Source: Diadema antillarum
Taxonomy: Eukaryota
DNA: 64,000 nucleotides
Assembly: GCF_040938485.1 (NCBI RefSeq)
Contig: NW_027272215.1
Location: 496,001 to 560,000, forward strand
Reading direction: 5' to 3'
Shown here in pieces: positions 3,590 through 47,760 of this stretch. Every line of letters starts with the position of its first letter. The stretch's first letter is position 1. A program made the translations under genes and the position numbers. Below the pieces are notes generated by a model. That model was given only the letters and a program-made list of their open reading frames with translations, had not been told where the DNA came from and did not search any database.

Positions 3590-5946
3590 ATCTATTAGGC
3601 TATACAAAATCATAACATTCATACTAGTCTAATACAAATCTTGTGCTGTATTTTGAAAAATACAAAATTTGTATGACAGCACAGTCCAATTTAAGTCATA
3701 AGTTTTTTATTTCTGATTACCTTGATCAGGATCTGGATGTTTATACTTTCAAATAATCACTAAGTACTATAGTATGATAGAACTGGGCGATTAGACATGT
3801 GCATATAGTATGAAATACATTCCATTTTACGTACTGAAAATTTCTATACTGTTATGACTCAAAGAATGTCCATCTGTCGTGAAATTTGAGTGGATAATGC
3901 TTGATTCCCGTCATAAATTATGTACCTAAGGAACCTGAAAAAAAAAAATCACTCGCTTAAGCAGATCTACATTTCAGGTAAAACATATAGAGATTTATTA
4001 CCGAACATTGATGACAGCTTCATCAACATTTATAAGTTTTCAGATTTAACTGTGACAGACATCTGTGAAAAAAATTGAGCAAAATTCGTCGAAAGATGTG
4101 GCTTCTATAAAGCCACATTTTCGTTAAAGTGGCATCGCATGTGCACATTTTTGACAACAGTACACCGCTTTAGGTCAAAGTTATATGTAACGATGGCGTG
4201 GTGCCCTTTAATAAGAATAATTACCCAGACAGCACTTCAATTTGACATGGACACGTGCACATCATATAAGAAGCAAATCTTTATGTCTAATAGGGATATG
4301 AATTAATTGCCTTCCGGTGTGCCTGGGCCGTGACGTGAGTGGTCATCCTTTAGCTCATCTTAGACTGCTGTTTGAAGACGGCAAAAGATATCTTGTCTGT
4401 CAAAAGATATCGTGTGTCTGTCTGGAAGAGCAATAGAATAAACAGAATAGTTCTCAGAACTGTCCCTATCATCACACATTATTTTCTTTTCTTTCGTACT
4501 GTGGGAAGGGAACCGGAAATCGTGTTTCATTTTGTCTGGAAGGGAAAAAGTAAGATTCGTAGAAAGCGCAATCCATGCAGTTTTTCGGTCATGCACCGTG
4601 CCAAAAATTCTTTGTCAGTGACATGTCACTCCTCACGACTTCACTAACGACCTGAGACAATTTTTTGCTTTTTATGTATAATCACTTTACTTACCCCCAC
4701 ACTTTTCATTTCATTTCATTTCATCTAATTTCTTTTCATTTCATATCATTATTAATTGTCAATTATACTTTGATTTGATAAGTCGAATTCAAATACGTAG
4801 CTGTGACTTTTTTGTGTCGCTTTACAATCTCATGTGATTGTGTTATTCAGTTGCATGATATCACATCTCACATCTTAGCCAAAATGTCAACAAACCCATA
4901 GAATTTTCTTTGTATTTTTGTAATCTCACTCTTCTGTTGATATCTTACATATCGAAAAGAATGAGCTGAATACTCTGACATCCTTACTTCACCGATCATT
5001 AGTTTTAAGGAGATATGAATCTACTGAGAGGATTGATAGGAGTTTTGATAGATGGAAAATCAGGCAGAACTATTTTTTTTTTAGTTGGCAACTATTAAAA
5101 GTTTCCATATCTCCTGCGATTTTTCACGAAAAGGAAACAAAACTATTCAGATAATTGATTTAGAATGGCAATGTGGCTGATAGAAGAGAATGACATCGAC
5201 TCTTGTATAAAGAGGCCCTGGGGTCGGTCCTCTCAGGTGTGTGTGCACCCTCTGGCGCCATCCGGACCTTCTACTGCTGGGGTATTGCCAAAGCACAGGT
5301 TACCCAGGGATTTCAGTGTCAACTTCCGCACTGCTACTCCTACTGAGACAATTGAAATCTATGCCTTCATTACATGCATGTGCTATGAAAAATATAGAAG
5401 ATGTGATATGTTGCTTCTGTTCAAAATGTAATCAACGTTACATAGAAGTAACTACTTCTCAAAGTAGTGTCACAAATTATGTTACCTGAAGAGTACGTAA
5501 TATAATATATGATTGATATTTTACAGTGTTTTACTGTAGTTCAGTTGGCATCAGCGCCCGAGATCGCTTCCAGTTAAAACGAATATTGCAATAATTTGAA
5601 GAATTTACTCCTTGCTATGATACCTTGTCCAATCTGGTCACGTGGACTAGATTAAAATAGTTAAAAAAACAACAATATACACATCGGAAAGCGTATGTCT
5701 TTCATTATACAGTATAACATAAACGCGTGTATTCCTCTCTGTGAGCTTCAGATTCCAAATATAGAACGCAAGGTTTTCGACAGTTCTACATCTTACTAAG
5801 ATTTTTGAGTACACGTATAACCACACAAGATATTTATAATGGACAAGACAAGCGTTATAAACAGTGTATACCATACACAGCCGAATTCTCCTCTTCCCGA
5901 AGGATTGATACAATTATTAATCAATCAAAATTATCTCTACTTAAAG

Positions 5947-6246
5947 GGAGACTTGGATTCTGGACCCTGATTTACAACCAGGGTTTCGAGGTCGTGATCA
6001 GGAACAAGAAGTTCTTCGGTTTCTCGGACTACGAGAAGATCTCGAAGAAGAAGGTCATCAGCTACTGCAACGTGACCATCGGCTGGGCTCACAACGATGA
6101 CCAGACGGATTGGTCCTGCTTCCGGGGCGAACAGATCTCGCGTTTCCGGGACACCGGTTCCTCTGTGAAGGCCCTGGACTTGGAAAACCTGGAGTCGCAA
6201 TTCGACGAACACGCCGTACATCGGAAAAACGATAAGTTTATCGCAG
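5947..6246 (+). CDS. CTSC: Cathepsin C-like exon: C-terminal part of the exclusion domain and start of the propeptide
   Basis: AG acceptor at 5945-46 and GT donor at 6247 (gtaagg), phase 1/1. Translates GRLGFWTLIYNQGFEVVIRNKKFFGFSDY...SYCNVTIGWAHNDDQTDWSCFRGE, matching the cathepsin C pattern GHFTIIYNQGFEIV...YCNETMTGWVHD...WACF. Confidence 0.92.
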
Positions 6247-6302
6247 GTAAGGCTCCTACCCTGGCGTTACAGTTACACCAGACATGTGACCTGACGGTTC
6301 TA

Positions 6303-6504
6303 GGCAATTACCCATGGGCGATTACTCCAGACCTTTCTCCTGACCCTAACCCTAATCCTAATCATGAACCTAATCCTAACCCTAACCCAAACTCTAACCA
6401 TAAACCTAAACCTCAGCCTAATCTTTACTCTAACATTATTGATAACCAGTATTTAGATGGGAGGCAATTGTCTGGGGGGCAATTGTCCTCGGGAGGTAAT
6501 TGCC
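6303..6504. mobile_element. Small non-autonomous element with a degenerate telomere-like (CCCTAA)n core
   Basis: A ccctaa/cctaat hexamer run at ~6339-6433 lies between 10-bp inverted repeats ggcaattacc (6303) and ggtaattgcc (6495). It sits in a CTSC intron. Confidence 0.6.
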
Positions 6505-7111
6505 CTGATAAGGAACTGACAATATACGCAAAAGGCGGGAAAGGATCTATGTAGCTATTGAATTGACTGGAATAGACCAGTGTGCTAAAATATTCACGTT
6601 TTATGCCTTATGCCCTTTATTATTACAAAGGGTGTTCTCAACAAGCACAAAGCTTCCTTCTCCGATACACCAACAAGTGGGGCCTAAAGCAATATCTACA
6701 TAAACAGCAATGTTGTCATCAATCATTATCTCTATGTTAAAACATAGATACTTTATTGTCAATGAAGAATAAAATAGAATAGACATGCATTCTTTAAGCA
6801 GACAGCAACGTAAAATTATCCAATTGCCTGGATTTATATAAAAGAAGTAATCTGCATGTTCCCGATTTTCTAAAGTTCAAATCAGCCTCCGTGGTTGAGC
6901 AAGTCGTGGTAGAATTTCCCATTTACTGTTCTCTTAAAACATTGTTTCATGGGTGGACTTCAATTTCGCATTCGCAAACTTTCCTCTTCAAATCAAAACA
7001 TTTTCGCATCGACAAAGAGCAATGATTATCTGGTTGTATGTTCATAGATCTTATGAATATCAACGCGATTGTAATCATGTCCTGCTCTGCTAAAAAAACT
7101 TAATGTTCCAG

Positions 7112-7289: not shown

Positions 7290-7685
7290 AGGGATAGTAC
7301 AGTTCCGGTTGGGATGGGACTTCAAGTTTCCATTTTCTTTTTTGATTTTTTCTTTTGAGATAATGAGAAACCTCTTATGAAATATGGAAGACCAAATAAT
7401 TCTAAGGGGAATTCAAAGTTTACTTGATGAACGTTGGTTTTGAAATGGCCGAGATATCCAAATCAAAACAATCCTAATAAAAAAATGGGACCCACCTTTA
7501 TTAGGTTCGCTTTGTTTTACTTTGTTTTTGGATATATCAGCCATTTCAAAACCGATTTTCATCAAATACACCTTGAATTCCTGTTCAAATTGTATGCTCT
7601 TTAACATTTATAAAGTGGTTTCTGAAGTATCTCGAAGAAAAGTTCAAAGCTGAATCCTCATCTCAACCAATACTATACCATCCCT
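7290..7685. mobile_element. MITE with 4-bp TTAT target duplication (TTAA-type, Kolobok/piggyBac-like)
   Basis: Termini agggatagtacag / tactataccatccct are flanked by ttat on both sides. Same family as 18955-19240 and 21213-21604 (shared aatgagaaacctcttatgaaatat, aaaccgattttcatcaaata). Confidence 0.75.
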
Positions 7686-18954: not shown

Positions 18955-19240
18955 ATTCTAAACGGTATCAAAAGTTTATTTGATGACAATCGGTTTTGAA
19001 ATGGCTGAAATATCAAAAAACAAGGTGAAACAAAGAGATCCTAATAAAAAGCGTGGCCTGTAGTCTTTTTTAATCACTTTTTGGGATATCTCAGCCATTT
19101 TAAAACCAATTTTCATCAAATAAATGTTGAATCCTTCTTAAAATTACATGCTCTTTCATATTTCATAATAGTTTTCCCATTATCTCACTTAGGAATGTAA
19201 AAAACATGAATCCCCACCTCAACCAGTACTGTACAGCCCT
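18955..19240. mobile_element. Partial inverted copy of the 7290/21213 MITE family
   Basis: Contains aaaaccaattttcatcaaataaa and ends ...tactgtacagccct|ttat. Confidence 0.6.
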
Positions 19241-21212: not shown

Positions 21213-21604
21213 AGGGATCATACAGTTTTGGTTAAGACCTAATTTCAGGTTTCTAACATTTTTTGGTAAGATAATGAGAAACCTCTTATGAAATATGAAA
21301 GAGCATGTAATTCTATGAGGAATTCAATCGTTATTTGATAAACATTGGTTTTGAAATGGCTGAGATATCCAAAACAGAGCAATTCTATCTAATAAAGTCT
21401 GGGACCCACACTTTATCACAAAAGTGTTTTTTTTTTTACTTTGTTTTTGGATGTTTTAGTCATTCCAAACCCGATTTCCATCAAGTAAACTTTGAATTCT
21501 TCTTAAAATGGTATGCTCTGTACTATATCATTTACAAGCATTTTCATGGTATCTCGCAAAAGTTAAAAGCCCAATTCTCGTCTACACAATACTGTACCAT
21601 CCCT
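21213..21604. mobile_element. Complete TTAA-flanked MITE
   Basis: ttaa|agggatcatacagt ... actgtaccatccct|ttaa. Confidence 0.8.
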
Positions 21605-29477: not shown

Positions 29478-31371
29478 CACTACTCAAAAAAAGTTAAGGA
29501 CCACTTTTTAATGTGTGTATACAATTTTCAAACCGGGTGTTGTATTTCTAGAAATACCCGAATATGGCTGTCTTGAATCTCCTCAAACACCCTGTAACAA
29601 TTTCACACATGGGTGGTTTCAGTTGTTGCATGATGTCTCTCGCATTATTGCATATCCTGAAAAGTGGGCCCATTGTGAAGTGGTACAAATGTGGATTCAA
29701 ATGCATTTTCTGTCTTTAGTCTCTACAATCAACAAATTGCTGACAACAGCAATGCCAAGATACAGCTGTCCAGGATGCCATCAAACACAATGAAATCAAT
29801 TTCACACATGCAGTTCTTTCATGTCTCTTGCATCATTGCAATGTGCCCGTACAAAAGTGGCTTCCAAAGCATTTTCTGTCTTTAGTCTCTACAATCAACA
29901 ACTTGCTGACAATAGCAATGCCAAGATACAGCTGTCCAGAATGCCATCAAACACAATGACATCAATTTCACACATGCAGTTCTTTCATGATGTCTCTGGC
30001 ATCATTGCAGTGGGCCATAAGACAAGTGTCTTCCAAAGCATTTTCTGTCTTTAGTCTGTACAATCAACAACTTGCCGACAACAGCAATGCCAAGACACCA
30101 CCTAAGTGAAACAGATGTAGCCAGAGCCCTAGGGATGCTGGAAGCTGGCCTCAGTCAGCGAAGAGTAGCCAGAATGATGGGCGTGTCACACAGTGTCATT
30201 AGCAGAGCAAATCAAAGACACCGAGAGACAGGGCTATACTCCGAGAGACCCCGCAGTGGCCGACCAGTTTCGACAACCCCTAGAGATGATCGCTACTTGA
30301 CGAATCTCAGCCTCCGCAACCGCTTTCACAGTGCACGACGCCTCAACAATGACTTCGCTGCAGCAACTGGAGTGATTGTTTCCACTCAAACAATCCGTAA
30401 CCGACTTCACAGAGCCAATATGCATGCCAGACGGCCAGCTCAGTGTGTCCCACTCACCCCTGCTCACAGAAGAATTCGTCTCAACTGGGCCCGGGAGCAT
30501 GTCAGATGGACCAGACAGCAATGGCGTAGAGTTCTGTTCACAGATGAGAGCAGATTTTCCCTTGACCACAATGATGGACGTTCGAGAGTCTGGAGGCGAC
30601 CAGGGGAGAGATTTGCAGACCCCTGTATTGCAGAACATGACCGTTATGGGGGAGGCAGCGTCATGGTGTGGGGAGGCATCACCTACGCCAACCGTACTCG
30701 TCTCTACGTGGTCCCAGGGGGAGCAATGACAGGAGTGAGGTACAGGGATGAGGTCCTTGAACCTATAGTGGTGCCATTTGCAGAAAATGTGGGACAAAAC
30801 ATCATTTTCATGGATGACAATGCCCGTGCCCACCGAGCTAGGGTGGTGACCGAGTTCCTTGAGGGCCAGGGGATTGAGCGTATGGAGTGGCCAGCGAGGT
30901 CCCCGGACTTAAACCCGATAGAGCACGTCTGGGACATGATGGGGAGGAGTCTCGAGCAGCTCGAAGCCCATCCACTTGGACTGCAGCAGCTGGGTGTTGC
31001 TCTGGAGGCTGCATGGGATGCACTGGATGTCAGAGACATCAATCGCCTCATCAGCTCCATGAGACAGCGCTGTGAAGCCGTTATTGCTGCAGGAGGTGGT
31101 CACACTCGTTACTGAACTGCCTGAAAGACACTCAGACATTCGTTTTTACCACTTCATGTCGGTAGCTGATACCCCTCGGGGCCCACTTTTCAGGATGTGC
31201 AGTGATGCGAGAGACATTGTGCAACAACTGAAACCACCCATGCGTGAAATTGATTACAGCGTGTTTAAGGACATTTAGGACAGTTGTACTGAGGTATTTC
31301 CAGAAATAAAACACCTTGTATAAAATTTTTATGTACGTTAAAAAGTGGTCCTTAACTTTTTTTGAGTAGTG
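29478..31371 (+). mobile_element. Full-length Tc1-like transposon with long (~190 bp) imperfect IRs
   Basis: TA|cactactcaaaaaaagttaaggaccactttttaa ... ttaaaaagtggtccttaacttttttgagtagtg|TA. IR similarity extends inward to cctgaaaagtgggccc. Confidence 0.97.
30087..31115 (+). CDS. Tc1 DD34E transposase, intact (342 aa)
   Basis: Paired-like HTH with GRP motif (RPRSGRP), FTDES, MDDNARAH and SPDLNPIE. 34 residues were counted between the second Asp and the Glu. Confidence 0.97.
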   Translation: MPRHHLSETDVARALGMLEAGLSQRRVARMMGVSHSVISRANQRHRETGLYSERPRSGRPVSTTPRDDRYLTNLSLRNRFHSARRLNNDFAAATGVIVSTQTIRNRLHRANMHARRPAQCVPLTPAHRRIRLNWAREHVRWTRQQWRRVLFTDESRFSLDHNDGRSRVWRRPGERFADPCIAEHDRYGGGSVMVWGGITYANRTRLYVVPGGAMTGVRYRDEVLEPIVVPFAENVGQNIIFMDDNARAHRARVVTEFLEGQGIERMEWPARSPDLNPIEHVWDMMGRSLEQLEAHPLGLQQLGVALEAAWDALDVRDINRLISSMRQRCEAVIAAGGGHTRY

Positions 31372-35667: not shown

Positions 35668-37372
35668 GTAAACCAGTGATTTTCTTTATTTTTTGTTCTT
35701 GTTTTTTAGGAAAAAGTTAGAACTATTCTGTAATCAATATGGCTCTCATTATGTCAAGTTACATTCACTGTAGATATAAAGAACAAATTAATTCTGAATT
35801 GAAGTTTCCCAGGGGTTGCATTGACAGGTTGGAGTGTTTGAGCTGTATCCAATGATGGTTGGATTTACCTCGTCTGAGCAGAATGCTAGCAGTAAGCTAT
35901 ATCGATCATTTATGAAATAATTATAAGATAATGTAAAACTTTTTAAAGGCATTAATAATTTAGCATTATGTGTTTTATCTTACCTATTTTTGTGTGTCTA
36001 ATCAGTAACAATGTTGGGAGCTCTCTTGCATCACAGTGCAGATTATATTTGTAGCTTCACTATACAAACTGGTCTAATTATTTTTATCAATATTCATCAG
36101 CCAGACATGGTAATGTATTGTGATATTAACATGTACTTTGCACAAATTGCAGTAGACAGAGGAATAAAATCCTCGTACGCAACGCTCCACCGATCAGACC
36201 AAGTTGGGTGAGTATGCCAAGTGCAACGTCATGCATACATCAGGATTTTTTTCAATGTGCTGTACAGTGTCAATAAACAAACGAGGTGTATTAATCATAT
36301 TGCCAAACATTTACTTTTCAATTGCTCAACTGTCAGTTTCCATTTGATCCTGACATGTTTGTAATGTTTACTATATTTTTTAAACAGAAAATATTTCTTT
36401 GTTAAATATCAACTTTTCCCTTGAAGGCTGTGTTCTGTTCCATGTGAACAGAAAGAAAAAAGTCTTTTGTTAAATCTAAGAATTACATTGTAAGTGTTGT
36501 AGCAAATCTCTATTCAATATGTGACCGTGCACCTCAAAACGAACATAAAGTCGCACACACTGATTTAGCGTTAGGACTGAAAAAAAGTGAAATGGGTCAA
36601 CCTAGCCGAACTTGACTTTTTCATATTTTCTGAAAGAGCGGGTCTTCTTTTACATTATACTAAAATTTGGTATCATAAAACGGGCAGGAAAGTGTGTTTT
36701 TTTAGCAGTTTATCTCGACCATTTTTGGTAGAATAGTGTGATTAGGTGTGTCTTTAGAATCCCTTTTTCATTTCTGAAAAACCTTGTCCACACTCTTCAC
36801 TTTCAACTCTAATAACTTTTGAAAGGATATTGCTACTGCTTTGAAAGTTAGTATTAATTATGGACAGAATGTGTTAATGAGGCATGCCTAATTTCAGTTT
36901 AATCTAATAATTCCTTCATTGTTGTTACTCTGGTGGTTTACTTCCTGTTTTTTGTCCCATTCATCGCACAGCCAGCATGGTTTGGTAAAGATTAAACGCT
37001 TGAATAGACACTGTACTTCAGAGCGTCTTTTCTCAGTTCACACTTTTCCTGAGTTTGTGCTTTCTTTCCAATATTTAGATAGGTTAGGAGAGTCCATTTG
37101 ATTTGAGTTATACATCATTTTAAAGCTTAAAGTCTGCTCTTTCAGAATATGGCCTTAACTAAAAATTCATGTCTGTCGACTTTTTGTTTGTTTTGAGGTG
37201 CAGGGTCACATATGATTTACCCATCATATTACATGTACACATGTGTATATTGCTCTTTGTGAACAGGAATCTCTTCAAGGCTGCAGAATGGAGAGTTAGA
37301 CTGCCACCCAAACTCCTAACAAAACTGGAGAAACTACACTTAAGGCCGTTAGTAGTTTCTATTTATCGAGGA

Positions 37373-37806
37373 GCTCGATGATAGCATCAAGGAAGGATTT
37401 CTGAAAACAGGTCTGGACCCAGATGATCCCACCATAATCTTCCACACCACAATAAGGGACGATGTTGATGGAATGGAAGAGGTATCCATCCACAAATTCA
37501 GGCCCGACACCCTTTTACCAGACACAGCTTTTAGGGCATCCTTTATCATCCTGGAGTGCAAGGTAAAGTTTGGTAATGGTACAACAGCAGTTGTATTTGA
37601 CGAAGACAAACGGACCTCAGTTAAGGCAAACAGACCGCTGCTGGAGGCTCTCGGTGATGAGAACTCACCATCGACTCCTTCTCTTCTCTTGCGTCAGATA
37701 GAGGAAGTTACTCCATCACCACACCATGAAAGTATATGCCGGCAGCACTACCAGAATCCACCACATCACCAGATATAACATAATGATAGATGAGAAGCTA
37801 GACAGA
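37373..37806 (+). pseudogene. Putative OB-fold-like module, copy 1
   Basis: Frameshifted ELDDSIKEGFLKTGLDPDDPT...LLEALGDENSP, homologous to 39405-40010. The fold call rests only on the linked 40041-40232 motif. Confidence 0.35.
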
Positions 37807-37811
37807 TGGGG

Positions 37812-37846
<35 letters not shown>

Positions 37847-38189
37847 ACAAGGGAGTGGCTCAAATTACATCTGCACTCTTTGCTTTTGATAACGTCCCTT
37901 TAGTTAAGTTATATTACAGCCTCGTACCTCGTAGTGCGCTCAAACAAGTGGCGCGAAAAAATAAAATGAATTACATGTTAATTTCTTATTTTTCTTCAAA
38001 GTTTATAAATTAACATATAGGCCTAGAGAGTGGTACACAAGTACACAGTGTTGTATATCAGACATGGCTATTTGACACTTTTAAAACTTTTTAAAAATGT
38101 ATCCCGACGGGTGTGTTTTTATTACTTTTTTGTTTTCTGTTCTTTTCAAAACTTCAATCCCACTTTTTATGGCCACAGGTATTTTTTAG

Positions 38190-38980
38190 GTTCTCCTGGC
38201 AAACATCAAAGTAGGAAATGCTATGTACACCCTGATAAAGGCATCGGCAAGCCGGATGGAGGCCTACAAAGCAGCGATTGTAGCCAACCCACAAATCCAA
38301 ATACCCATCCTTTCTGTAATGAACATTGATGAGGACTGGCACCTAGAGAGAGCAGAGTTCTCCACATACATGCTCCTAGCTGGCTGTAATCTTCTAGCAG
38401 CGCTCCTCGACTTGAATGGAGACAAGAAGTAAGTGATAAAAATCAAATATTATTGTCATCGTTTTTATTGCCATGTTGGCTGGAAACCCTACATTGGTCA
38501 ATTGTTAATGTAAGGGGGAAAAAGGAAAAAAAAGTTACTTACTACTAACACAGGAAGGCATTCGAAGATAAATCCTACCAGGTACTCAGCTAGCACCTGA
38601 GTTGAGATTGGAAAAGCAGATTAAAATCTTCCTAAAGAACCCTAGTGCAGGGCTAAAATTTATACTCGCAACGTACCTTTTGACTCCATGTCAGGTGAAT
38701 GAACCACTACACCATAACACCTTCAAATATTATAGATAGAGTTATAGATAGTATGTCTCTTCAAGGTTTGAGAGAGGAAGAGAGGTACTCACTCCTTACA
38801 AAGGCAGTGAATGGGGAAGTCGAGCTCCATCAGCTGAAGACAGCAGCAAAGCGGCTGAAGGGGCTACAAGCAGTTCGCACCGAGTTCCAGCTACTAGCAA
38901 AGAAGAAATCGTGGGAGGAATGTTACATGGAGTACCCTGAGTACACCAGTGATGCAGATCTAGAGCAGTTCATACAAAAA
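38190..38980 (+). pseudogene. Two exons (38190-38428 and ~38750-38980) of a ParB/Srx-like-domain protein of the kind linked to Ginger-type elements
   Basis: AG/GT-bounded. MEAYKAAIVANPQIQIPILSV...TYMLLAGCNLLAALLDL resembles a degenerate I.GGNHR..A.EL motif, followed by LQGL.EEERYSLL...ELHQLK..AKRLK...F......SWEEC..EYP. Recalled similarity only. Confidence 0.4.
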
Positions 38981-39205
38981 GTATAAAAATCATACCCGAT
39001 AATTTTGTTGGTGATATTCATGAAATTGTAATCACGCAGTGGCGTGGTGTCCAAGACCTAAAATGTAGGATTGGTAGGAAACATGGTCCCTCTATCCAAC
39101 AGACAGAGTGGCTGTAGGCGAGGTCACTATATAAACCCTACGGTATACCAAACTAGATCTGTTTGCGTTTCATGGATGTTTTTGTGTTTCTGTTGTAATG
39201 TGTAG

Positions 39206-39381
39206 GTCATCTAGGACGGGATAGGACAAAGGCGATGATCAGAAAGCGCTTCTACTGGCCATGTCTCTCTAAGGATGTTGCAGACTACGTGAAGGGCTGC
39301 ATCTCATGCCAGAAGACAGCTCCTTCTCTCAAGAAGGTGCAACCTCTGCATCCCATTCCAGTGACCGGTGTATGGGATCAG
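39206..39381 (+). pseudogene. Second copy of the integrase H2C2 exon
   Basis: Near-identical to 34514-34689, including ~60 bp of upstream intron. Confidence 0.88.
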
Positions 39382-39404
39382 GTAATCACATCTACTCAAG
39401 AAAT

Positions 39405-40232
39405 ATCATTTGTGTGCATCAAGAAAGGATTCATCAAAGCAGGTCTGGACCCAGATGATCCTACAGTAACGGTTCACGCTACAATATTAAAAGGATGGGG
39501 CTAATGGAATAGGAGAAGTGGTGGTTCACAAATCAAGAGCAGACACCTTTTTGCCTGACAAGGCATTTAGAGTCTCTTTTGTCGTCCCCAAGTGCGAGGT
39601 AAAGCTATGCAATGATAAAACAGTACTTGCATTTGAGGAAGACAAACCACACTCAGTAATGGTAAACAGATGGCTGTTGGAGGCTCTCGGTGACGAGAAA
39701 TCTCCATCGACTACCACAATTCTTTTGCGTCAGATGGAGTCTAAGAGGAAATTACATATCCACCACAGAATGAAAGTGGATGCTGGCATGAACACAGGAA
39801 TTCATCATATCACTGTGTACACCACCATAATAGAAGAGAAGATCGACAGATCACAGGGGCCGGGGCAAAAAATCTTGAGGAGCTTGATGGCAGCATCAAG
39901 GAAGGATTTCTGAAAGCAGGTCTGGACCCAGATGATCCCACCAGAACGGTTCACACCACAATAAAGGATGGCACTGGTGGAATGGAAGAGGTATCCATCC
40001 ACAAATTTCCCTGACTTATCTGTCATACAGATGAAAGGTTATGTGGAAACACAAAACCTACAAAAGGCAGAGGATTGAACTCTCTCACAACAATGACAAC
40101 ATCAACATTGTGCTATGGAATGATGCAGCCACACAATCACAGAAAGCAGCAATGGAATCATCCGTCAAAATCACATACTTGGTAAAAAAGGACAAGCAAA
40201 TCATCACAACATCATCGAGTGTTGTTGAAGTA
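39405..40232 (+). pseudogene. Tandem (~470 bp) putative OB-fold modules ending in an RPA1-like OB motif
   Basis: gcaggtctggacccagatgatcc occurs at ~39438 and ~39916. YKRQRIELSHNNDNINIVLWNDAA...VKITYL resembles the KR.I.L.D..G.I..TLW OB signature. Confidence 0.45.
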
Positions 40233-40995
40233 TGTGCTAAACAAGATCTATTTAACAGATTTTTGAACACTGAGATAAGTATTGGTAAACACATTTTCAT
40301 CTTCTTCAGAACCAGAAGGGCGGATTTCAGACAATCAAACTTGGTGAGGATCATTCCTAGTGGTTAGGGTTGTTGTAAGTTGTAAGTAAGTGTAGGACAA
40401 GTGCATTGGTATGAGATTTAGCATTCCAGGAGTAAGAATTTGATTAAGGTAATCAATAATTGTTTCAGGCAGGACTAGTATTCAATGCTAGCAATTTTGT
40501 TGGGGGGGGGGGGGGCATTTTCTGGCAAAGATATGGCAATGTATCGAGTCCCTGTGCTGCCACGTCACTTTCATAATACTGGGTCATGGGTGGCGATAAA
40601 CTTTTGATTTGTCTTTGTGATAATTGTGGAGGAGCAGAAAGTTACCAAAATGTGCCGCCAATGTCCTGTACATTTTGGTAAGTTTACCAAAATGTGCTGT
40701 AACAGTCTCACCTTTCATCATGATCACTCTGTTTTGGATATCTCTCCTGCTTCAAAACCAATATCTATCAATAAACATTAAATACCTCTTAGAATGGTAT
40801 CATGCTCTGTACAATTTCATATCAAGTGGTCTCCCATTATCTCACCAAAAGATGTTAGAATGCATTCAGGAAACAAATGGCTCTTTTATTTTGTACAATA
40901 AAAACAATAAGTTACATATTAAAATCTTAAACAACTAGTCCAAACAATTTTTATAATTTGATATGTAGTAATACATGTAAATCAGTAATGCTGTC

Positions 40996-41188
40996 ATAAT
41001 GTGTAGACTAAAGAAATTGATTATACATTTATTTTCTTGATAAGATAAACTAATCCTTTGAAAAAAATTATTGAATGAGATTGATAATAAAGCAAAATCT
41101 CATATTCTCCTGATATAGCAGTAAGCCTTACTTAAAAGTTAAATGCCAAACACTTTCTTAGCGACTGAATGTAAAATTTATCTGTACG
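40996..41188. repeat. ~190-bp direct repeat, copy 1 (copy 2 at 42369-42557)
   Basis: ataatgtgtagac...aaaatctcatattctcctgatatagcagtaagcc...aaaatttatctgtacg is present twice. Confidence 0.92.
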
Positions 41189-41769
41189 CTCTTTTTTCTT
41201 TGCTACTCTGTAAGCATGCAAGAATTATTATCTTAGAATACTACTAGAATTTTGTCATGATCCTAGTTCATAATGGTTAAAAAATGTTCAAAAAAGGTCC
41301 TTTTCACATTTTAATAGTCTACATCAGCTCCCATGACTATGAAGACTGGTGTCATTATTGGCCTGAATGATGACAAAGGGTAAGCAGATAACTCTTTACA
41401 GCCGTAGATCATTTCCCAATAGCAACAAAATATCAATTCACACCAGGCTTACTTGCAAAAGCATTGGAATACAATATCTGTCAATTGCTTTTAAAAAGTG
41501 GCTGGAGAAGAGGAAACAACATATTACAACTGATATGCTACTATATTCTTTTTTTTTTCCAGGGTCATAGAGCGAGCATGATAAGGATTCCTACCAAAAA
41601 CAACACAAACATCTGACAGTCAAATAATTTTGTGATTGGGTCTTGATTGGGGACTACTTCCTCACATTTCTTCAATCATCAAGAGAAGCCATCAAACAGG
41701 TAAAAAAGAAGGCGTCTTCATACACCGAATCCACAAGTCCACAGATTCACTAGAGGCAGGCTGAGCTAC

Positions 41770-41975
41770 CTGAGATAAACATACACTTGTCCCCAACCTT
41801 CCAAGTGTCAGTTGAACAAGTTCATTGTCTTCCTCCAAAAAACCCTTGTATCTGACCTCCGCCACCTGCTGACCATCGCTGTCGACTTGGATCTGGCAGA
41901 TGACCGCCCTGTAGTAGTAGGAGTCACCAGAATAAGGAGCCATACACTTGTCCCCAACCTTCCATATGTCTGCCA
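41770..41975 (-). pseudogene. Tudor domain (SMN/TDRD-like) plus the start of a second tandem Tudor
   Basis: WKVGDKCMAPYSGDSYYYRAVICQI...AEVRYKGFLEEDNELV. The sequence tggaaggttggggacaagtgtatg is duplicated at ~41781 and ~41941. Confidence 0.85.
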
Positions 41976-41989
41976 TATTGAGTTGTAGG

Positions 41990-42280
41990 GATTCGTACAC
42001 TCTCTGGGCAATGACCGCAGACATTGCTTGAGCAACTTTCGGAACTCTTTGGGCTCACGTCCCCATTGTTCACATATTGCAGATAGAAGTATCCGATTTG
42101 AGGAACATACGGTATGACGTCTCACGCATGTACTGCTCCACCTATGCCTGGCTGGCACCAAAGAGGTTGCTGTTGACAGAGTTTGTCCTGCTAGAGACTG
42201 CGACAATCCCTTCCACTACACCTTTTGGGTGTTCTGATGCCTTATACAATTATCTTCCTTGATGTAAACACTCATCACAA
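41990..42280 (-). pseudogene. Axin-like RGS-domain C-terminal fragment
   Basis: With frameshifts and stops: YIKEDNCIRHQ...NSNLFGASQA*VEQYMRETSYRMFLKSD-FYLQYVNNGDVSPKSSESCSS..GH(L)PRVYE, versus Axin [30 protein letters not shown]...SPK...GYLPTLNE. Confidence 0.65.
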
Positions 42281-42368
42281 CAATCCGACTCTGTGATTTT
42301 TACTTGTTGCTTTTTGCAGACTGGACACGCTTTCCATTAAGCTGATAACTGTTGAAGGCCTTGCTATT

Positions 42369-42557
42369 ATAATGTGTAGACAAAGGAAATTGATTATACA
42401 TTTAATTTCTTGATCAGATAAACTAATTCTTTGAAAACAAGATTTATTGAATGAGATTGATAATACAGCAAAATCTCATATTCTCCTGATATAGCAGTAA
42501 GCCTTACTTCAATGCCAAACACTTTCTTAGCGACTCAATGTAAAATTTATCTGTACG
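42369..42557. repeat. ~190-bp direct repeat, copy 2
   Basis: See 40996-41188. Confidence 0.92.
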
Positions 42558-43062
42558 AGTGGGTTCTAAGCAACGAGGAATAAAAACCAAAGGCCCTTTT
42601 AAGGGCCACACAAATCCTAGAAAGAATATGTGCCCAGCAGCCTGCACACACCCTTGAATTATCAATAATTTAGTACTCTGAAAAAAATACAAAAATATAC
42701 AGTACAGATGTTTCACATATTAAATGCAATGTGTACGGGAGGCCAAGCATATTCGAGGTGGTTTAGATTTCTATATTAAAGTGAGCTAGCGTATAGTCCT
42801 TTGATCATTAGCCACTGCATCACAATTAATGAAATTACATGTGATACGTTTCTGCCTTATTCTAATTTTATTTATGCATACTCCTCAGTCTTTTAAGTCA
42901 AAATTTCATTGGAAACGATGAATTGTGCAATCTTTAATCTAGAGGTTCTGTGAAGTTTACAATGAAATACTTGAAATCAATTCGCTTCGTTTTATGATGC
43001 TATTGATTACAGGATATCTGGTATGTGGATAAGAATAAACCCAAGGACCTCATGGTTCCCCT

Positions 43063-43282
43063 TTGTATACTGGAGGGGTGCCAATTATTGGGGACATGAA
43101 AAAGAAGGAAACCTTCAGGAAGGGGAAAACGAAGGAAGCCCTCCTCTTCGCATTGCTGGAGAGCGCCTTTGGCATGGAGACGTTGGCCGACGGTAAGTCG
43201 TGTGGGACGAGAACGGCCATCAACAAGGTGGGAGATAAGTCCCATCATGCTCTCAACCCTGAAAAACTCAATGAAATAAAAG
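43063..43282 (+). pseudogene. BEN-domain exon
   Basis: LLFALLESAFGMETLADGKSCG...HALNPEKLNEIK|gtgag fits the BEN pattern LL..LF..E.LA....G....LDP.KL..IK. Confidence 0.65.
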
Positions 43283-43974
43283 GTGAGAATAATTTTTCTT
43301 TTTCCATTGAAAGGTTGCAAGCTGGCATAAAAGGTTGCGGCAGCTCATTTAAATATTTGGAATGCTGCAGCTTGCCCCAAGCTTGCAGCAAGCTAATCAG
43401 CAAGCTTACGGCAAGCTTGCAAGGCATACTTTTCAGATTTGAATAAGGGCAGAGTCCCAAAGCCACATGCAAAGAGACTTGTGGCAAAAAAGGCAGCCCA
43501 AGTGAATGTGAGGGAGGACTTCCCCTGCAACATCTACCCCAGCAACACCGGGTCATTCCTACTTTCCTGATGTGTCATTCACATCACTTTCTTCAATGCC
43601 GTACTCGCCTCTACCATCGCTGTCATCTTTACCTGCCTCGCCTTTGCCATCGTGTCCTACGTCTTCTTTGCTGTCGTTGTCTTCCTCGCCATCGCTGGCG
43701 CCTCCATCACTGGATCTTCAGCCAGCAAGATAATGGGGATGCGCAGAATGATGGAAGATTACCTCGGATCACCACCACCTAACCCACCTGCACCAACGAA
43801 TCCTCCAACCACAACAACGCCAACTCCAACCACAACACCGCTGTAACCAGGACAACGTCACCTTCACCAATGCCACCTGCACTAACGCCTGCTCCAACCA
43901 CGACCATACCAGCTCATGCACCTCCATCAATGCCACCCGCATCATTCATCACTCCACCAGCAGCTGCGGCAGAT

Positions 43975-44226
43975 AGAAAAATGCAGTTCCTGCCGTCATG
44001 CAGCTGTTCGGTGATGAACTTTGCGGCACGGTTGGCAAAGCGCCTGATCACAATGGAGGAACTCCGGGAAGGAAACTGTGCTGGAGTTTGAGGCAAGACA
44101 GCTCTGGACAGGGATCGACTGGCCTTCATTTTAAAGCATGTCCAAGCAGTATGTGGGGTCCACAAAGGTGAACTTCACACCATACGGTGATGTCGCATCG
44201 CAATAGATATGTATGCTTGGAAACAG
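43975..44226 (+). pseudogene. Second BEN domain (two in-frame stops), preceded by a Pro/Ser/Thr-rich linker
   Basis: SVMNFAARLAKRLITMEELREGNCAGV*GKTALDRDRLAFILKHV...*CRIAIDMYAWKQ|gtaat. Confidence 0.7.
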
Positions 44227-44363
44227 GTAATTTGACTACCTGACTCGATCATCCAACTACTCTGCCTTCACCGACGCCCTGCTCCACCTCGATCGCCAAC
44301 CATGCCAACGCCTTCTTCACCGACTGCACCATCGACCACTCCCACCACTGAAGTTCTTCCGAC

Positions 44364-44913
44364 ATGGATATGGGGGAAATAGCAACATTTTTAGCACTTG
44401 ATCTTGACCTTTTGACCTTTTACCTCTTGCTAATGTCACTAAAATCTACTCAACTAATTGCCCCATCATACATCATCCTTGGACCAAATTTGGAGAAAGA
44501 TGTTTCATCCAGTTTTGAGTTATTACGTAAACAGTTGAATTTTAGGATTTGACCTTGCTCTTTGACCTTTGACCTCAGTCCAATTTCACTCAAAAACAAA
44601 TCAAGTAATTGTCCCATCATACATCATCCTCGGAGAAAGTTTGGTGAAATTTGCTCGGTCCAGTCTCGAGTTATCGCGTAAACAAACACATTTTCATGAT
44701 TTGACCTTGACCTTTGACCTTTGGCCGATTTCACCCAAAATCTCATCAATTGCCCCGTCATACTTTATAGTTGGACCAAGTTTGGTAAAATTCCAGTCAA
44801 CATTACTCAAGTTATGGCGTGAACGGATGGACGGACGTACGGACGTATGGACGGACAGACAACCTGAAAATATAATGCCTCCGGCACCACTTCGTGGCGG
44901 AGGCATAAAAAAA
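44364..44913. mobile_element. Non-autonomous Helentron-associated (HINE/DINE-like) element
   Basis: Repeated tgacctttgacct motifs, a (GACG)n/ggac microsatellite, and a terminal hairpin gcctccg...cggaggc followed by an A-run. Confidence 0.65.
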
Positions 44914-45194
44914 GAAAAGCATCAGTTCTGCGGCGAGGAGGAGGAAATTGAAGTCATCGATGGCTACGAAGAGGATCACCACATCTACTCTGAAGATCTG
45001 TACGAGTGGATTCTAGCCAATGAGGAGTAAAAACCAAAGGCTCTTTTTTAAGGGCCACACAATCAAGAGGAACACGACATGGACCTTTACCCAGAATGTG
45101 GACTAGCATTCACAAGAATCACACGCATGCGATTTACAAGAATCGCATGCATTTTCAGAACAGTGACTTTTTCTGTGTACATCCCGATGCGTTG

Positions 45195-45590
45195 AGACTT
45201 GTCTATACGCAGATAAGTTTGAGGTAGCTAACCCTATGGGTAGAAAGCAAGGCCAACAAAAGATGTTGGCATTATTGTAGTTTATAATGAATAATGTAGA
45301 GGATAGGTGGAACTCTACTCTGAAAAACATACATCTAGCATTGCTCATGAAATACAAGTTTGCTCAAAGATATACCTACAAAGCTATTTTACAACCTTAG
45401 TCAGAGACCATAAGAACTTAGAGACTGAAGGTGTAACAATAATGGTTGACGGTATAAACCATCATCATGTGGGTACTGTCGTAGCCTTGTGTGGAGACAA
45501 CCTATCCAGTCATTCTTTTGGTGGATTTTCAACCAATTCATCATCTGGAAGAATGTGTCCTCACTGCATTTTGACAGACACATTATGGTC
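45195..45590 (+). pseudogene. CMC/EnSpm-like transposase remnant
   Basis: (D)KFEVANPMG.K...K...; WNSTLKNIHLALL..Y....Y.YKAILQP-LVRD.KNLETEGV...GTVVALCGDNLSSHSFGGFS......MCPHC. Confidence 0.75.
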
Positions 45591-46468
45591 TAAAACATTA
45601 ATTTGTAGAAAATGAATTTACTTTATAATGATTTCATATTTATTTGATTGCCACAAGACCAGAAAGTCTGCTATCTAGAGATCCATTGCTCACGTATGCA
45701 GTACACACAAAGCAATTACTGGACTTCATCGAAACATCATCCAGCATCCATGCCCCCCTCCCCTCCACCCCCAGTGCCAGGGCATATGGGTGTTTCCATT
45801 TATTTGGGGGCCAGTTGTCAATTCATGGGTATGCAGTTTGTAATGGCCCTTTTCCCCTTCTGAACAATTACACACATTTTTAAAATATTTATATCTTTAT
45901 TAAATACATATGAAGGTATTCCACCCCAAAATTGGAATTAATATAAATCTCGGGATTTTTATTTTTGGCGCCAAATAATCTGTGGTGTCCCATGTTTTTT
46001 TTAGGCTTTTTTGTGACATATAGATAATGTCCTTTGTTTTAAGTGCTGTAAAATATTCATATGATATTTGAATTTAATTGTTTTGCTTATAATGTGAAAA
46101 AATCACGAATAAACATATATCCTAAGAAGTTGCCTATTTTGCAACCCATCGTTATTGTGCAATCAATGAATCAACGTTGGGGTCGCTACGTAAATTTTCG
46201 TGTCCCAAACATTACGTAGGGATTCCCATTTTCCCACGGTCTGTAAATTTTTAAAATAACGATAGCAAGCGGCAAATCAGTTGTTCTTCACGTAGATAAA
46301 CATAAATTAACTAATGGGTATATTTAGCAAAAACATCCAGCACCGTATGTCGAAAATATTACAACTTTATCGAAAAATACGAACATTCGTGTCCCAACGA
46401 TTTATTTACGTCGTAAGAATTCGCTTGAGAATGGAGTAGTCCATCGGTCATTTTTATGAATGAACGAC

Positions 46469-46531
46469 CACGTGATTCAACGCCCCGGAAGTGCTTCTTA
46501 CAACGTACTTCTTGACAACGGTCGCCATTTT
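46469..46531. promoter_or_regulatory. Promoter-like motif cluster (E-box, ETS, YY1)
   Basis: CACGTG at 46469, CCGGAAGT at 46485 and CGCCATTTT at 46523, within a CpG-rich patch. Confidence 0.3.
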
Positions 46532-47219
46532 CTTCCTATCGACGGAGAACGAAAACAGTTTTCGTGTCCCATCATTTACGATGCCCCTGTGGAACCTTTT
46601 TACGGTTGGGATTTGCCTTTAAGCAAGAAATTCGTGAGTAATTTCGTTCTTCCTTTAACTTATGTATCGTATTTTTGTATTTATTGATGCTCTTAATTTG
46701 TTAAAAAGTGCCAAAATACGTCGCAAGCGCGTGTTCGTCTGAGAAGCTTCCAAAGGGGCATTGTCGTTGTTGAACAACGTAAATATGGACACGAAAATTT
46801 CCGTTTCCCGATTTACGCTGTCATCTTGTAGCCGCCCACTGTTTATCTTAATTGTGCTATTAATTAATGAATGATAAGTTTATGTGTAAGCGGTTAATTT
46901 TAATAGTTATATGAAGCGATTTGATGAAAATTGCGACGAATTGAAAGGCGTATTGAAAGGCAAATTGAAAGTTGTAAACCCATCGTAAATTGTGCAAAAG
47001 AAAACCAATTAAATCGTGTCCCGATTTACGTTGTGTATAATTTTGTCAATTGTAGCTTCTGGTTACATTTATGATTTATTATTCTGCATGTTCAGATATC
47101 TAGATCTAGACTATATACTTTGAGATACTACCAGTCGCATTTAATAAAGGATTTGTGATTAAAATCTCAACAAATTACCGTACATGTGGGACTGGGAGAA
47201 CTCTGCACCTGTGCCTGTG

Positions 47220-47760
47220 GTAAACTCGGCCCCCGACAACAACTGGCTCAATAAAACCGGGTTTTTCGTGCTATTTCAATAATAATTCATACATCAACAA
47301 CTTACTGAAAGCAATTGTAAGCTGTTGATGTATGAACTACAGGGGTGATATTCCTCAGATTTAAATCGGAATTCCGATTTTTAGTTTTTTTATTTTTTTA
47401 TTTTTTATTTTTTTTTTTTTTTGGTACAAGTTATTAACAAGATCTAGATCTATATGATTTCTTGTTTAAATCATAACATGTTTGTCCTGATACAGTAAAT
47501 CTTAAGCCCAAATTTCCCCTCCAGGTATGCACAAAATTGCACAATTTAAAGTCCCAAAATGCAAAAAGTCCTTACCGTACGAGGGGGACACCCCCTCCCA
47601 CACCCTCCCCCCTCCTCGGTCGCTCCGCTCCCTCGCGGAAGTAGACTTAGACCCTGTCTATTTTTTTTTTCAAGAGTGAATATCACCCCTGGAATTACTA
47701 TTGCAATACCAAGAAAAACCTGATTTTATTTAGCCAGTTGTTGTCGGGGGCCGATTTTAC
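47220..47760. mobile_element. Palindromic foldback element with a nested MITE
   Basis: gtaaactcggcccccgacaacaactggct...aataattc (47220-47288) mirrors gaattacta...agccagttgttgtcgggggccgattttac (47692-47760). Confidence 0.8.
47340..47691. mobile_element. Nested MITE
   Basis: TIRs caggggtgatattc / gaatatcacccctg. Flanks gaacta / gaatta (5 of 6 identical). Confidence 0.8.

What the first reader, a model, noticed from the sequence alone, without database searches (positions are those of the whole stretch)
40996..42557. Captured Axin-RGS fragment fused to tandem Tudor domains, bracketed by 190-bp direct repeats
Seen: on the minus strand, a frameshifted Axin-like RGS C-terminus (LFGASQA.VEQYMRETSYRMFLKSD-YLQYVNNG..SPK...GH(L)PRVYE) runs without an intron straight into WKVGDKC..Tudor and the start of a second Tudor. 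The ~1.2-kb cassette is enclosed by two near-identical 190-bp direct repeats. Established: Axin is the scaffold of the beta-catenin destruction complex, its RGS domain binds APC, and Axin does not contain a Tudor domain. Inference: a transposon-mediated host-gene capture or exon-shuffling event involving a Wnt-pathway gene, now decayed here; intact relatives may exist elsewhere.
Basis: partly seen in the sequence, partly recalled or inferred. Interest (0 to 1): 0.75.

Follow-up and report, generated by a model that had tools for sequence, protein, structure and literature searches.

The report
Dead mosaic of two gene fragments
This is a short, broken patch of sea-urchin DNA stitched from copies of pieces of two unrelated genes, probably Axin and certainly the repair helicase ERCC6L2, the latter most likely copied from spliced RNA; it is a common kind of genomic scar, not a working RGS-Tudor fusion or a gene-carrying transposon.

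Summary
The direct repeats are real: 40989-41188 and 42362-42557, with 11 substitutions in 193 aligned bases plus two indels. They occur only at this locus.

Only about 426 bp (42205-41780, minus strand) of the 1173 bp between them comes from genes.
- **42205-42022.** A 184-bp copy, 10-13% diverged, of a locus found once elsewhere in the genome. That parent lacks this copy's stop codon and its 2-base frameshift. The reading looks like the tail of an Axin RGS domain, but no tool could confirm it because the pieces are too short.
- **41976-41810.** The "Tudor" is the N-terminus of ERCC6L2, from its own start codon to about residue 55 (61% identity to Lytechinus pictus ERCC6L2, E 4.6e-16). The first intron, conserved in three annotated genomes, is missing, so this piece most likely came from spliced mRNA.
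- **41809-41780.** The "second Tudor" is only a 30-nt duplicate.

The Axin and ERCC6L2 frames differ, so there was never an RGS-Tudor fusion protein. There are no inverted terminal repeats, tRNA primer-binding site, short target duplication or extra copies, so transposon capture is not supported. A related taxon carries the same locus with the same frameshift.

Verdict: a chimeric pseudogene patch, at least partly RNA-derived. This is an ordinary kind of feature. The scan has not reported it on other DNA.

The parts
40989..41188 (.). Direct repeat copy A (200 nt)
   Evidence: It has only one partner in the window. Summed contig depth is at most 1.7 times the single-copy level.
41189..41201 (-). 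Purine run (AAAGAAAAAAGAG on the minus strand) that abuts repeat A. It could be a polypurine tract or the remnant of an A-tail.
   Evidence: Read directly from the sequence; its meaning is inferred.
41202..41779 (.). Unassigned single-copy spacer, with an A10 run at 41549-41558 on the minus strand
   Evidence: Depth is flat at the single-copy level, and there is no coding or RNA-family match.
41780..41809 (-).
   Evidence: 93% identical to 41941-41970. It carries the D-T-W variant also seen in other contigs at 41966.
41810..41976 (-). ERCC6L2-derived coding fragment, from the ATG (41976-41974) to about residue 55, forming a nearly complete N-terminal Tudor barrel. The exon 1/exon 2 junction lies between 41970 and 41969, with no intron.
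   Evidence: tblastn of L. pictus ERCC6L2 residues 1-54 gives 61% identity, E 4.6e-16. P0014 is the hit with the highest identity in a single matched stretch among 1.84 billion representatives. PDB 6hq9 matches at E 2.6e-5. Intron position.
41977..42021 (-). 45-nt stretch between the two gene pieces, probably the ERCC6L2 5' leader (exon 1)
   Evidence: Inferred. The bases around the ATG (AATATGGCAG) resemble the end of L. pictus exon 1 (AATATGGAAG). The parent leader itself was not available.
42022..42205 (-). RGS-tail-like fragment, probably from Axin. It has a TAG stop at 42144-42142 and two extra bases near 42086-42089.
   Evidence: In all four runs, a second contig of 1.3-2.1 kb matches only this interval. 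It differs at 19-24 letters and is 2 bases shorter, and it has C at 42144. The pieces alone give no family match.
42206..42361 (.). Unassigned single-copy spacer
42362..42557 (.). Direct repeat copy B (196 nt)
42549..42631 (+). Neighbour on the other strand: the last 11 codons of an unidentified coding exon (stop at 42581-42583), followed by a histone-type 3' stem-loop (42587-42631). Its first 9 nt overlap the end of repeat B.
   Evidence: Rfam RF00032 scores 37.9 bits against a gathering score of 34. A fuller copy lies at 44917-45080.

Best explanation
A non-functional patch of about 426 bp (42205-41780, minus strand) sits in TE-rich intergenic DNA. It is made of copies of pieces of two unrelated host genes.

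**Shown**
- One piece is the 5' end of ERCC6L2: start codon, exon 1 joined to exon 2, and about 55 codons of its Tudor domain.
- The other piece is a 184-bp copy of a locus found once elsewhere, and that locus lacks this copy's stop codon and its two extra bases.
- Both pieces lie in the same orientation, 45 nt apart, in different reading frames.
- The locus is single-copy, and a related taxon shares it, frameshift included.

**Inferred**
- The ERCC6L2 piece was reverse-transcribed from spliced mRNA. The 45 nt are its leader, so the Axin-like piece is joined at or near the 5' end of that mRNA.
- The parent of the 184-bp piece is Axin.
- The fragments were joined either by template switching or by end-joining of cDNA fragments at a chromosome break, like an RNA-templated repair patch. 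The 30-nt re-copy at one edge would be a by-product of that repair.
- The 196-200-nt repeats are a local duplication with no proven link to the patch.

The patch does nothing now and drifts neutrally.
For: **ERCC6L2 identity**
- Lytechinus pictus ERCC6L2 is the hit with the highest identity in a single matched stretch (60%, protein residues 4-56).
- Pfam finds SNF2, Helicase_C, VIGSSK and RHH_ERCC6L2 in that protein.
- tblastn of residues 1-54 gives E 4.6e-16, and no other ERCC6L2 exon lies in the window.
- The PDB structure 6hq9 matches from chain residue 2.

**Missing intron**
- In L. pictus the coding sequence runs ATGGAAG, then a 4-kb intron, then an exon that starts 5 nt before the W codon.
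- The intron has the same position and phase in two further annotated genomes. An acceptor-like site sits 5-6 nt before the W codon in two more contigs.
- The window has ATGGCAG joined directly to that exon.
- Extra contigs cover 41837-41966 but not 42012.

**Parent of the RGS-like piece**
- All four runs hold a long contig that matches only 42022-42205 and is 2 bases shorter, with C instead of A at 42144.

**Decay**
- The stop and the frameshift break the RGS-like reading.
- The sites shown between this haplotype and the other contigs change 5 ORF codons and leave 1 unchanged.

**No transposon features**
-.

**Literature**
- cDNA patches and chimeric retrocopies are described in PMC5110952 and PMC2104539.
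Against: - Axin identity is not shown by any tool. The three pieces (20-23 homologous residues each) give no Pfam or PDB hit, and no Axin sequence could be fetched by reference. The match to Axin (F-L-K-S-D, Y-L-x-Y, S-P-K) rests on my recollection.
- The intron argument assumes that the Diadema ERCC6L2 gene keeps that intron. The Diadema gene itself was not seen.
- The junction CAG|AC could also be read as an intron acceptor. That reading needs an in-frame ATG at the right spacing by chance, and the upstream run is poor in pyrimidines.
- The Axin-like piece differs from its parent by 10-13%, while the two repeats differ by about 6%. The timing of the events is therefore unclear.
- No empty site, no parental junction sequence and no RNA run were available.
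Confidence: 0.6

Rival explanations
1. The whole 1173-bp spacer is one multi-part retro-insertion. It would be made from several RNA templates and inserted at nicks staggered by about 200 bp, so the two repeats would be an unusually long target-site duplication.
For: - The repeats directly flank the spacer.
- On the minus strand a purine/A-rich run (41201-41189) abuts the downstream repeat, where a tail would sit.
- At least one component is RNA-derived.
- Chimeric retrocopies flanked by direct repeats are known.
Against: - Known target duplications are 10-20 bp.
- The unassigned 156 and 590 nt have no second copy in any run, so they have no visible source RNA gene.
- No poly(A) signal lies at the usual distance.
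- The repeats are less diverged (about 6%) than the Axin-like piece is from its parent (10-13%).
- The part layout is the reverse of classic LINE chimeras. Here the 3' component keeps its 5' end and loses its 3' end.
Confidence: 0.15
2. The repeats are the terminal repeats of a small non-autonomous LTR-type retroelement (TRIM-like) that picked up host mRNA fragments during reverse transcription.
For: - The direct repeats are 196-200 nt long.
- A polypurine run sits directly upstream of the 3' repeat in the orientation of the gene pieces.
- If the repeats are younger than the captured piece, that fits an element that had captured it earlier.
Against: - The repeat starts CG, not TG.
- No TGG-type primer-binding site follows the 5' repeat.
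- The flanking 5-mers differ at 2 of 5 positions.
- No tRNA-like sequence was found.
- The repeats and spacer are confined to this locus in four runs.
- No gag or pol relic lies inside.
Confidence: 0.08
3. The fragments were copied at the DNA level, either by a DNA transposon or Helitron or by replication template switching between genomic loci.
For: - Two gene fragments lie side by side in a TE-rich region.
- Nested partial duplications (the 30-nt copy and the 196-nt repeats) resemble serial template switches.
- The end of repeat B shares 9 nt with the adjoining exon copy.
Against: - The ERCC6L2 piece crosses a conserved intron site without the intron.
- No terminal inverted repeats were found.
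- The locus is single-copy, and no transposase is attached.
Confidence: 0.07
4. The locus is functional. Either it is a young gene encoding a stand-alone Tudor protein (ORF 42024-41695, with ATG at 41976), or it is an exon set or antisense part of a transcript.
For: - The 110-codon ORF is open and holds a nearly whole Tudor barrel.
- No indel in this ORF is listed for the related taxon.
- The locus has been retained in two taxa.
Against: - The changes shown are mostly amino-acid-changing.
- The ORF tail is unrelated read-through.
- The Axin-like part is broken in both taxa.
- No RNA run holds the locus.
- No similar small protein was found in 5.8 billion clusters.
Confidence: 0.05
5. The RGS-like reading does not come from Axin. 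Its parent is another RGS-family gene or some unrelated coding exon.
For: - No tool match supports Axin.
- By my recollection, the core motif before and including F-L-K-S-D is shared by many RGS proteins.
Against: - The tail after the domain (Y-L-x-Y, then G-x-x-S-P-K) is, as I recall it, specific to Axin.
- The parent has no stop or frameshift at the two sites and occurs only once more in the genome.
Confidence: 0.12

Closest known systems
RNA-templated repair patches (class 2 templated sequence insertions; PMC5110952)
   Same: Short pieces (about 180-240 bp) templated from distant transcribed genes, at least one of them spliced. The edges of the gene-derived patch have no poly(A) tail and no short target duplication. 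A small local re-copy sits at one edge.
   Different: These are described in humans and in cell assays. Here there are two different donor genes in one patch. The junctions could not be checked for microhomology because the donors and the empty site are unavailable.
Chimeric retrogenes made by template switching during LINE reverse transcription (PMC2104539)
   Same: Copies of different cellular RNAs are joined directly in the same orientation, with the join most likely at the 5' end of one RNA. Direct repeats flank the region.
   Different: - In the classic cases the 5' part is a full-length RNA and the 3' part is a 5'-truncated RNA with an A-tail, flanked by 10-20-bp repeats.
- Here the 5' part is an internal fragment and the 3' part keeps its 5' end but is cut after 55 codons.
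- There is no clear tail.
- The repeats are 196-200 nt long and lie 156 and 590 nt away from the gene pieces.
Gene-fragment-carrying transposons (Pack-MULEs, Helitrons; from general knowledge)
   Same: Several host gene fragments lie side by side in non-coding context.
   Different: No terminal inverted repeats or Helitron-type ends were found, and no amplification. One fragment lacks an intron, which DNA capture would keep.
ERCC6L2/Hebo N-terminal Tudor domain (PDB 6hq9; PMC4886357)
   Same: It is the best structural-sequence match. The alignment starts at the protein's first residues, and the fragment is 58-61% identical to a sea-urchin orthologue.
   Different: Only the first 55 residues or so are present. 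The SNF2 ATPase, HEBO and RHH parts are absent from the window.
Axin RGS domain
   Same: The reading resembles the last two helices of an RGS domain and the Axin-type tail that follows it (recollection, not a tool result).
   Different: At most about 60 codons are present, out of a domain of about 120 residues. The APC-binding groove cannot be formed. The piece is broken by a stop and a frameshift, and no profile match was obtained.

Membership tests
Axin / RGS domain (Pfam PF00615) | Significant match to the RGS profile or to an Axin protein | tested here: inconclusive
   The pieces were searched apart, as required. None gave a Pfam hit at E up to 10, and none gave an Axin or RGS chain in the PDB. 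The pieces have 20-23 homologous residues each, too short to score. The joined read-through was left out.
Axin / RGS domain (Pfam PF00615) | Complete, open RGS domain | tested here: not met
   Only 184 bp are homologous to the parent. There is a TAG stop at 42144-42142 and two extra bases near 42086-42089.
Axin / RGS domain (Pfam PF00615) | Parent locus is the Axin gene of this genome | not testable with these tools
   The parent contigs were seen only as aligned pieces. The Axin locus is known only from note s1-224584. A search by sequence returned nothing.
ERCC6L2/Hebo | Sequence similarity to the N-terminal Tudor of ERCC6L2 orthologues, starting at the initiator Met | tested here: met
   58-61% identity to L. 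pictus ERCC6L2, E 4.6e-16.
ERCC6L2/Hebo | Tudor followed by the SNF2 ATPase, HEBO and RHH domains | tested here: not met
   No other ERCC6L2 exon lies in the 64-kb window. This is a fragment, not the gene.
Processed (RNA-derived) pseudogene | Lacks an intron that the parent gene has | tested here: met
   Intron 1 lies 5 nt before the W codon in three annotated ERCC6L2 genes, and an acceptor-like site sits 5-6 nt before it in two more contigs. It is absent here. The caveat is that the Diadema parent itself was not seen.
Processed (RNA-derived) pseudogene | 3' poly(A) tail and a short (about 10-20 bp) target-site duplication | tested here: not met
   No A-run lies at the 3' edge of the gene-derived part. 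There is only an A10 run 220 nt away and a 13-nt purine run at repeat A. The flanking repeats are 196-200 nt long.
LTR retrotransposon / TRIM | TG..CA termini, tRNA primer-binding site, 4-6-bp target duplication, multiple copies | tested here: not met
   The repeat starts CG, and no TGG follows the 5' repeat. The flanking 5-mers are CCACT and TTACT. No tRNA-like sequence was found. Only this locus appears in four runs. A polypurine run next to the 3' repeat is the one feature met.
DNA transposon with captured gene fragments | Terminal inverted repeats around the cassette, and a family of copies | tested here: not met
   No inverted pair brackets the region in 36000-47500. The locus is single-copy. 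Helitron-type ends were not specifically scanned.
Class 2 templated sequence insertion | Microhomology, microdeletion or non-templated bases at junctions, compared with the empty site | not testable with these tools
   This needs the donor loci and an empty orthologous site. Neither could be fetched.

The most novel reading that the evidence does not exclude
The whole 1.17-kb spacer is a single, multi-template retro-insertion (Axin mRNA, ERCC6L2 mRNA and unidentified RNAs). It would have been made by an echinoderm reverse transcriptase at nicks about 200 bp apart, so the two repeats would be an exceptionally long target-site duplication. Or the repeats are the ends of a so far unseen class of small retroelements that carry host mRNA pieces.
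Probability: 0.15. Interest if true: 0.45.

Novelty: new member of a known kind. Interest (0 to 1): 0.2.

Why it matters
It matters little for Wnt signalling or Tudor biology. No RGS-Tudor protein exists or ever existed here, and the real Axin and ERCC6L2 genes are elsewhere. Its modest value is as a dated, shared marker. It shows that spliced host mRNA fragments were most likely reverse-transcribed and pasted into the germline genome of a diadematoid sea urchin. It is also a caution for annotation, because ab initio callers could mis-join these pieces into a false chimeric gene.

Tried and rejected
- **RGS pieces searched apart.** Pfam and PDB searches gave nothing, or only chance hits to MRPL32 and alpha-synuclein.
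- **Word-index protein searches.** Searches with the 110-aa ORF and the 55-aa piece found no small relatives. The third allowed search was not spent, because the length window rules out Axin-sized proteins.
- **Paper text search.** A search for an Axin motif found no paper.
- **Scan notes.** The search by sequence was blank. Word searches for ERCC6L2 and for retrocopies were also blank.
- **Link to the neighbouring Sola2 transposon.**
- **Native ERCC6L2 gene in the window.** Rejected, because no other ERCC6L2 exon is present.
- **Poly(A)-tailed retrocopy ending at the A10 run.** Rejected, because the segment before it has no second genomic copy and no poly(A) signal.
- **Weak joint 40986 to 42408 in the related taxon.** Only 24 letters lie on one side, so it is too weak to call an empty or recombined allele.

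Full report
**Anatomy**

The region is rich in transposon relics:
- a Tc1-type transposase at 30072-31112;
- integrase-like and RAG1-like fragments at 38600-39910;
- a Sola2 element at 48-53 kb.

Aligned, they differ by 11 substitutions in 193 bases (K2P 0.059), plus a 3-nt and a 7-nt indel. They have no further copy in the window.

Between the repeats lie 1173 bp. Read on the minus strand, these are:
- 156 nt unassigned (42361-42206);
- a 184-nt RGS-tail-like stretch (42205-42022);
- 45 nt (42021-41977);
- a Tudor-type coding stretch that starts with ATG (41976-41810);
- a 30-nt repeat of that stretch's first codons (41809-41780);
- about 590 nt unassigned, ending in a 13-nt purine run that abuts repeat A.

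**The Tudor part is the start of ERCC6L2**

Pfam gives the Tudor only a sub-threshold SMN_Tudor match (18.4 bits, cut-off 22.7). Against solved structures, the best match is the N-terminal Tudor of human ERCC6L2 (6hq9, E 2.6e-5), aligned from the chain's second residue. SPF30, TDRD3 and SMN score lower.

A search of 1.84 billion representative proteins found 116 hits, many of them multi-Tudor proteins. The hit with the highest identity in a single matched stretch (60%, protein residues 4-56) is P0014. Its source names it ERCC6L2 of the sea urchin Lytechinus pictus. Pfam confirms SNF2, Helicase_C, VIGSSK and RHH_ERCC6L2 domains in it.

tblastn of the L. pictus protein against the window matches residues 1-54 to 41976-41815 (61% identity, E 4.6e-16) and nothing else in 64 kb. 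The window therefore holds an isolated copy of the first 55 codons or so, beginning at the gene's own start codon. It does not hold the gene, and the Tudor is not a free module. ERCC6L2/Hebo is known to begin with a Tudor domain (PMC4886357).

**The ERCC6L2 piece is spliced**

In L. pictus the coding sequence opens with seven bases, ATGGAAG, followed by a GT donor. A 4-kb intron follows, and the next exon begins five bases before the W codon. Two other annotated ERCC6L2 genes, from assemblies GCA_015706575.1 and GCA_964340395.1, have an intron at the same position and phase. Two further contigs show a pyrimidine run and an AG five or six bases before the W codon.

In the window, ATGGCAG is joined directly to the five bases and the W codon. 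Even the bases around the ATG resemble the end of L. pictus exon 1 (AATATGGCAG against AATATGGAAG). The extra Diadema contigs that match the Tudor stretch cover 41837-41966 but not 42012, which fits a parent interrupted there.

I conclude that this piece most likely came from spliced mRNA. It follows, by inference, that the 45 nt upstream are its leader. The piece stops at about codon 55, inside the exon, which runs to codon 65 in L. pictus.

**The RGS-like part**

Contigs of four public runs were laid on 40300-43300. Two runs carry one organism label and two carry a second label; at this locus the second is about 97% identical to the first.

In every run, a second long contig (1.3-2.1 kb) matches only 42022-42205. 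It differs at 19-24 letters and is two bases shorter, with unlike sequence on both sides. It has C where the window has A at 42144, which turns the window's TAG into GAG. The missing bases lie at 42086-42089, exactly where the reading frame slips. So this stretch is a diverged copy of a locus that occurs once more in the genome and lacks both defects.

The translation reads like the end of an RGS domain followed by the Axin-type tail. That resemblance is my recollection of Axin, not a tool result:
- I left the joined read-through out.
- No Axin sequence could be obtained by reference.

I rate Axin as the parent at about 85%.

**Not a fusion, and decaying**

Before the slip the Axin-like frame is one frame, and after it another. 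The ERCC6L2 frame differs by one base from the frame the Axin piece would have without the two extra bases. The two were therefore never in frame, unless further indels hide in the 45 nt.

The related taxon shares the two extra bases but not the stop. The frameshift is therefore old and the stop is recent.

The sites shown between this haplotype and the other contigs change five codons of the ORF and leave one unchanged. At three of those codons the other letter is the majority or only reading in the contigs. This is a small sample and mixes parent and orthologue contigs, but it points to neutral drift. No listed run that holds the stretch is on record as RNA.

**The repeats and the transposon question**

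- Summed contig depth over the repeats is at most 1.7 times the single-copy level, although each copy can also match the other. The unassigned parts of the spacer are flat at the single-copy level. The structure therefore exists only here.
- No inverted repeats bracket it, and there is no tRNA-like sequence.
- The repeat starts CG, not TG. No TGG-type primer site follows it, and the flanking 5-mers differ at two of five positions.
- The only retroelement-like trait is the purine run next to repeat A.
- Because the unassigned spacer has no second copy anywhere while both gene pieces do, the simplest reading is that the spacer is native DNA and only about 426 bp were inserted. The repeats may then be an unrelated local duplication.
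- Repeat B ends in nine bases that also begin a truncated copy of an unidentified terminal exon with a histone-type stem-loop on the other strand. This is another sign of repeated breakage and joining at this spot.

**Mechanism and comparison**

The best fit is a patch of reverse-transcribed RNA fragments joined at a break. This resembles class 2 templated sequence insertions, which include spliced cDNA and lack tails and target duplications (PMC5110952). The alternative is template switching by a reverse transcriptase, as in chimeric retrogenes (PMC2104539). The classic LINE-chimera layout and its 10-20-bp duplications are not met here.

The rivals are listed with their tests:
- insertion of the whole spacer with a long target duplication;
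- an LTR-like element;
- DNA-level capture;
- a young Tudor-only gene.

**Limits**

- Only assembled contigs were available, not raw reads, so depth is approximate.
- The parental junction sequences, the Diadema ERCC6L2 and Axin loci and an empty site could not be read.
- Nothing here needed referral.

Noticed in passing
window 42549-42631 (+) and 44917-45080 (+): A histone-type 3' stem-loop follows the stop codon of a non-histone reading that ends L-Y-E-W-x-L-x-N-E-E. The first stem-loop scores 37.9 bits on Rfam RF00032, above the gathering score. The second, behind a longer acidic exon, scores 19.2 bits. Summed contig depth over 42522-42622 is several-fold above the single-copy level. This looks like a small gene or element family that uses a histone-style RNA end.
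   Followed up: partly
window 40603-40905: A very high-copy interspersed repeat. Summed contig depth is hundreds of times the single-copy level in all four runs. Diverged copies lie in the window at 21251-21379, 7356-7465 and 19077-19188.
   Followed up: partly
window 38600-39913 (+): Relics of mobile-element proteins: an integrase zinc-finger-like motif (about 39100-39200) and an ORF at 39518-39910 with a weak RAG1-core match (Pfam PF12940, E 0.004, below the cut-off). This is possibly a Transib/RAG-like fragment.
   Followed up: no
window 5805-6551 (+): An ORF with a clear Cathepsin C exclusion domain (Pfam PF08773, E 2e-22), probably an exon of a host dipeptidyl-peptidase I gene.
   Followed up: no
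window 44790-44915 (+): A stretch whose translation runs through G-R-T-D repeats and ends P-P-A-P-L-R-G-G-G-I-K-K. It looks like a common invertebrate interspersed repeat, and it sits directly upstream of the acidic terminal exon at 44917.
   Followed up: no
window 44003-44102 (+): A weak box C/D snoRNA-like match (Rfam snoU83B, 26.4 bits, gathering score 35, E 0.019).
   Followed up: no
window 40986 / 42408, in runs X4 and X5: One contig in each run of the related taxon joins the left flank to a point 46 nt inside repeat B. This could be an allele with a single, recombined repeat, or an assembly artefact. Only 24 letters lie on one side.
   Followed up: no
proteins P0001-P0013: Many uncharacterised proteins from environmental and invertebrate assemblies carry 4-13 tandem Tudor units of this SMN/ERCC6L2-like type. 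One of them (P0001, 1733 aa) also has a helicase C-terminal domain.
   Followed up: partly
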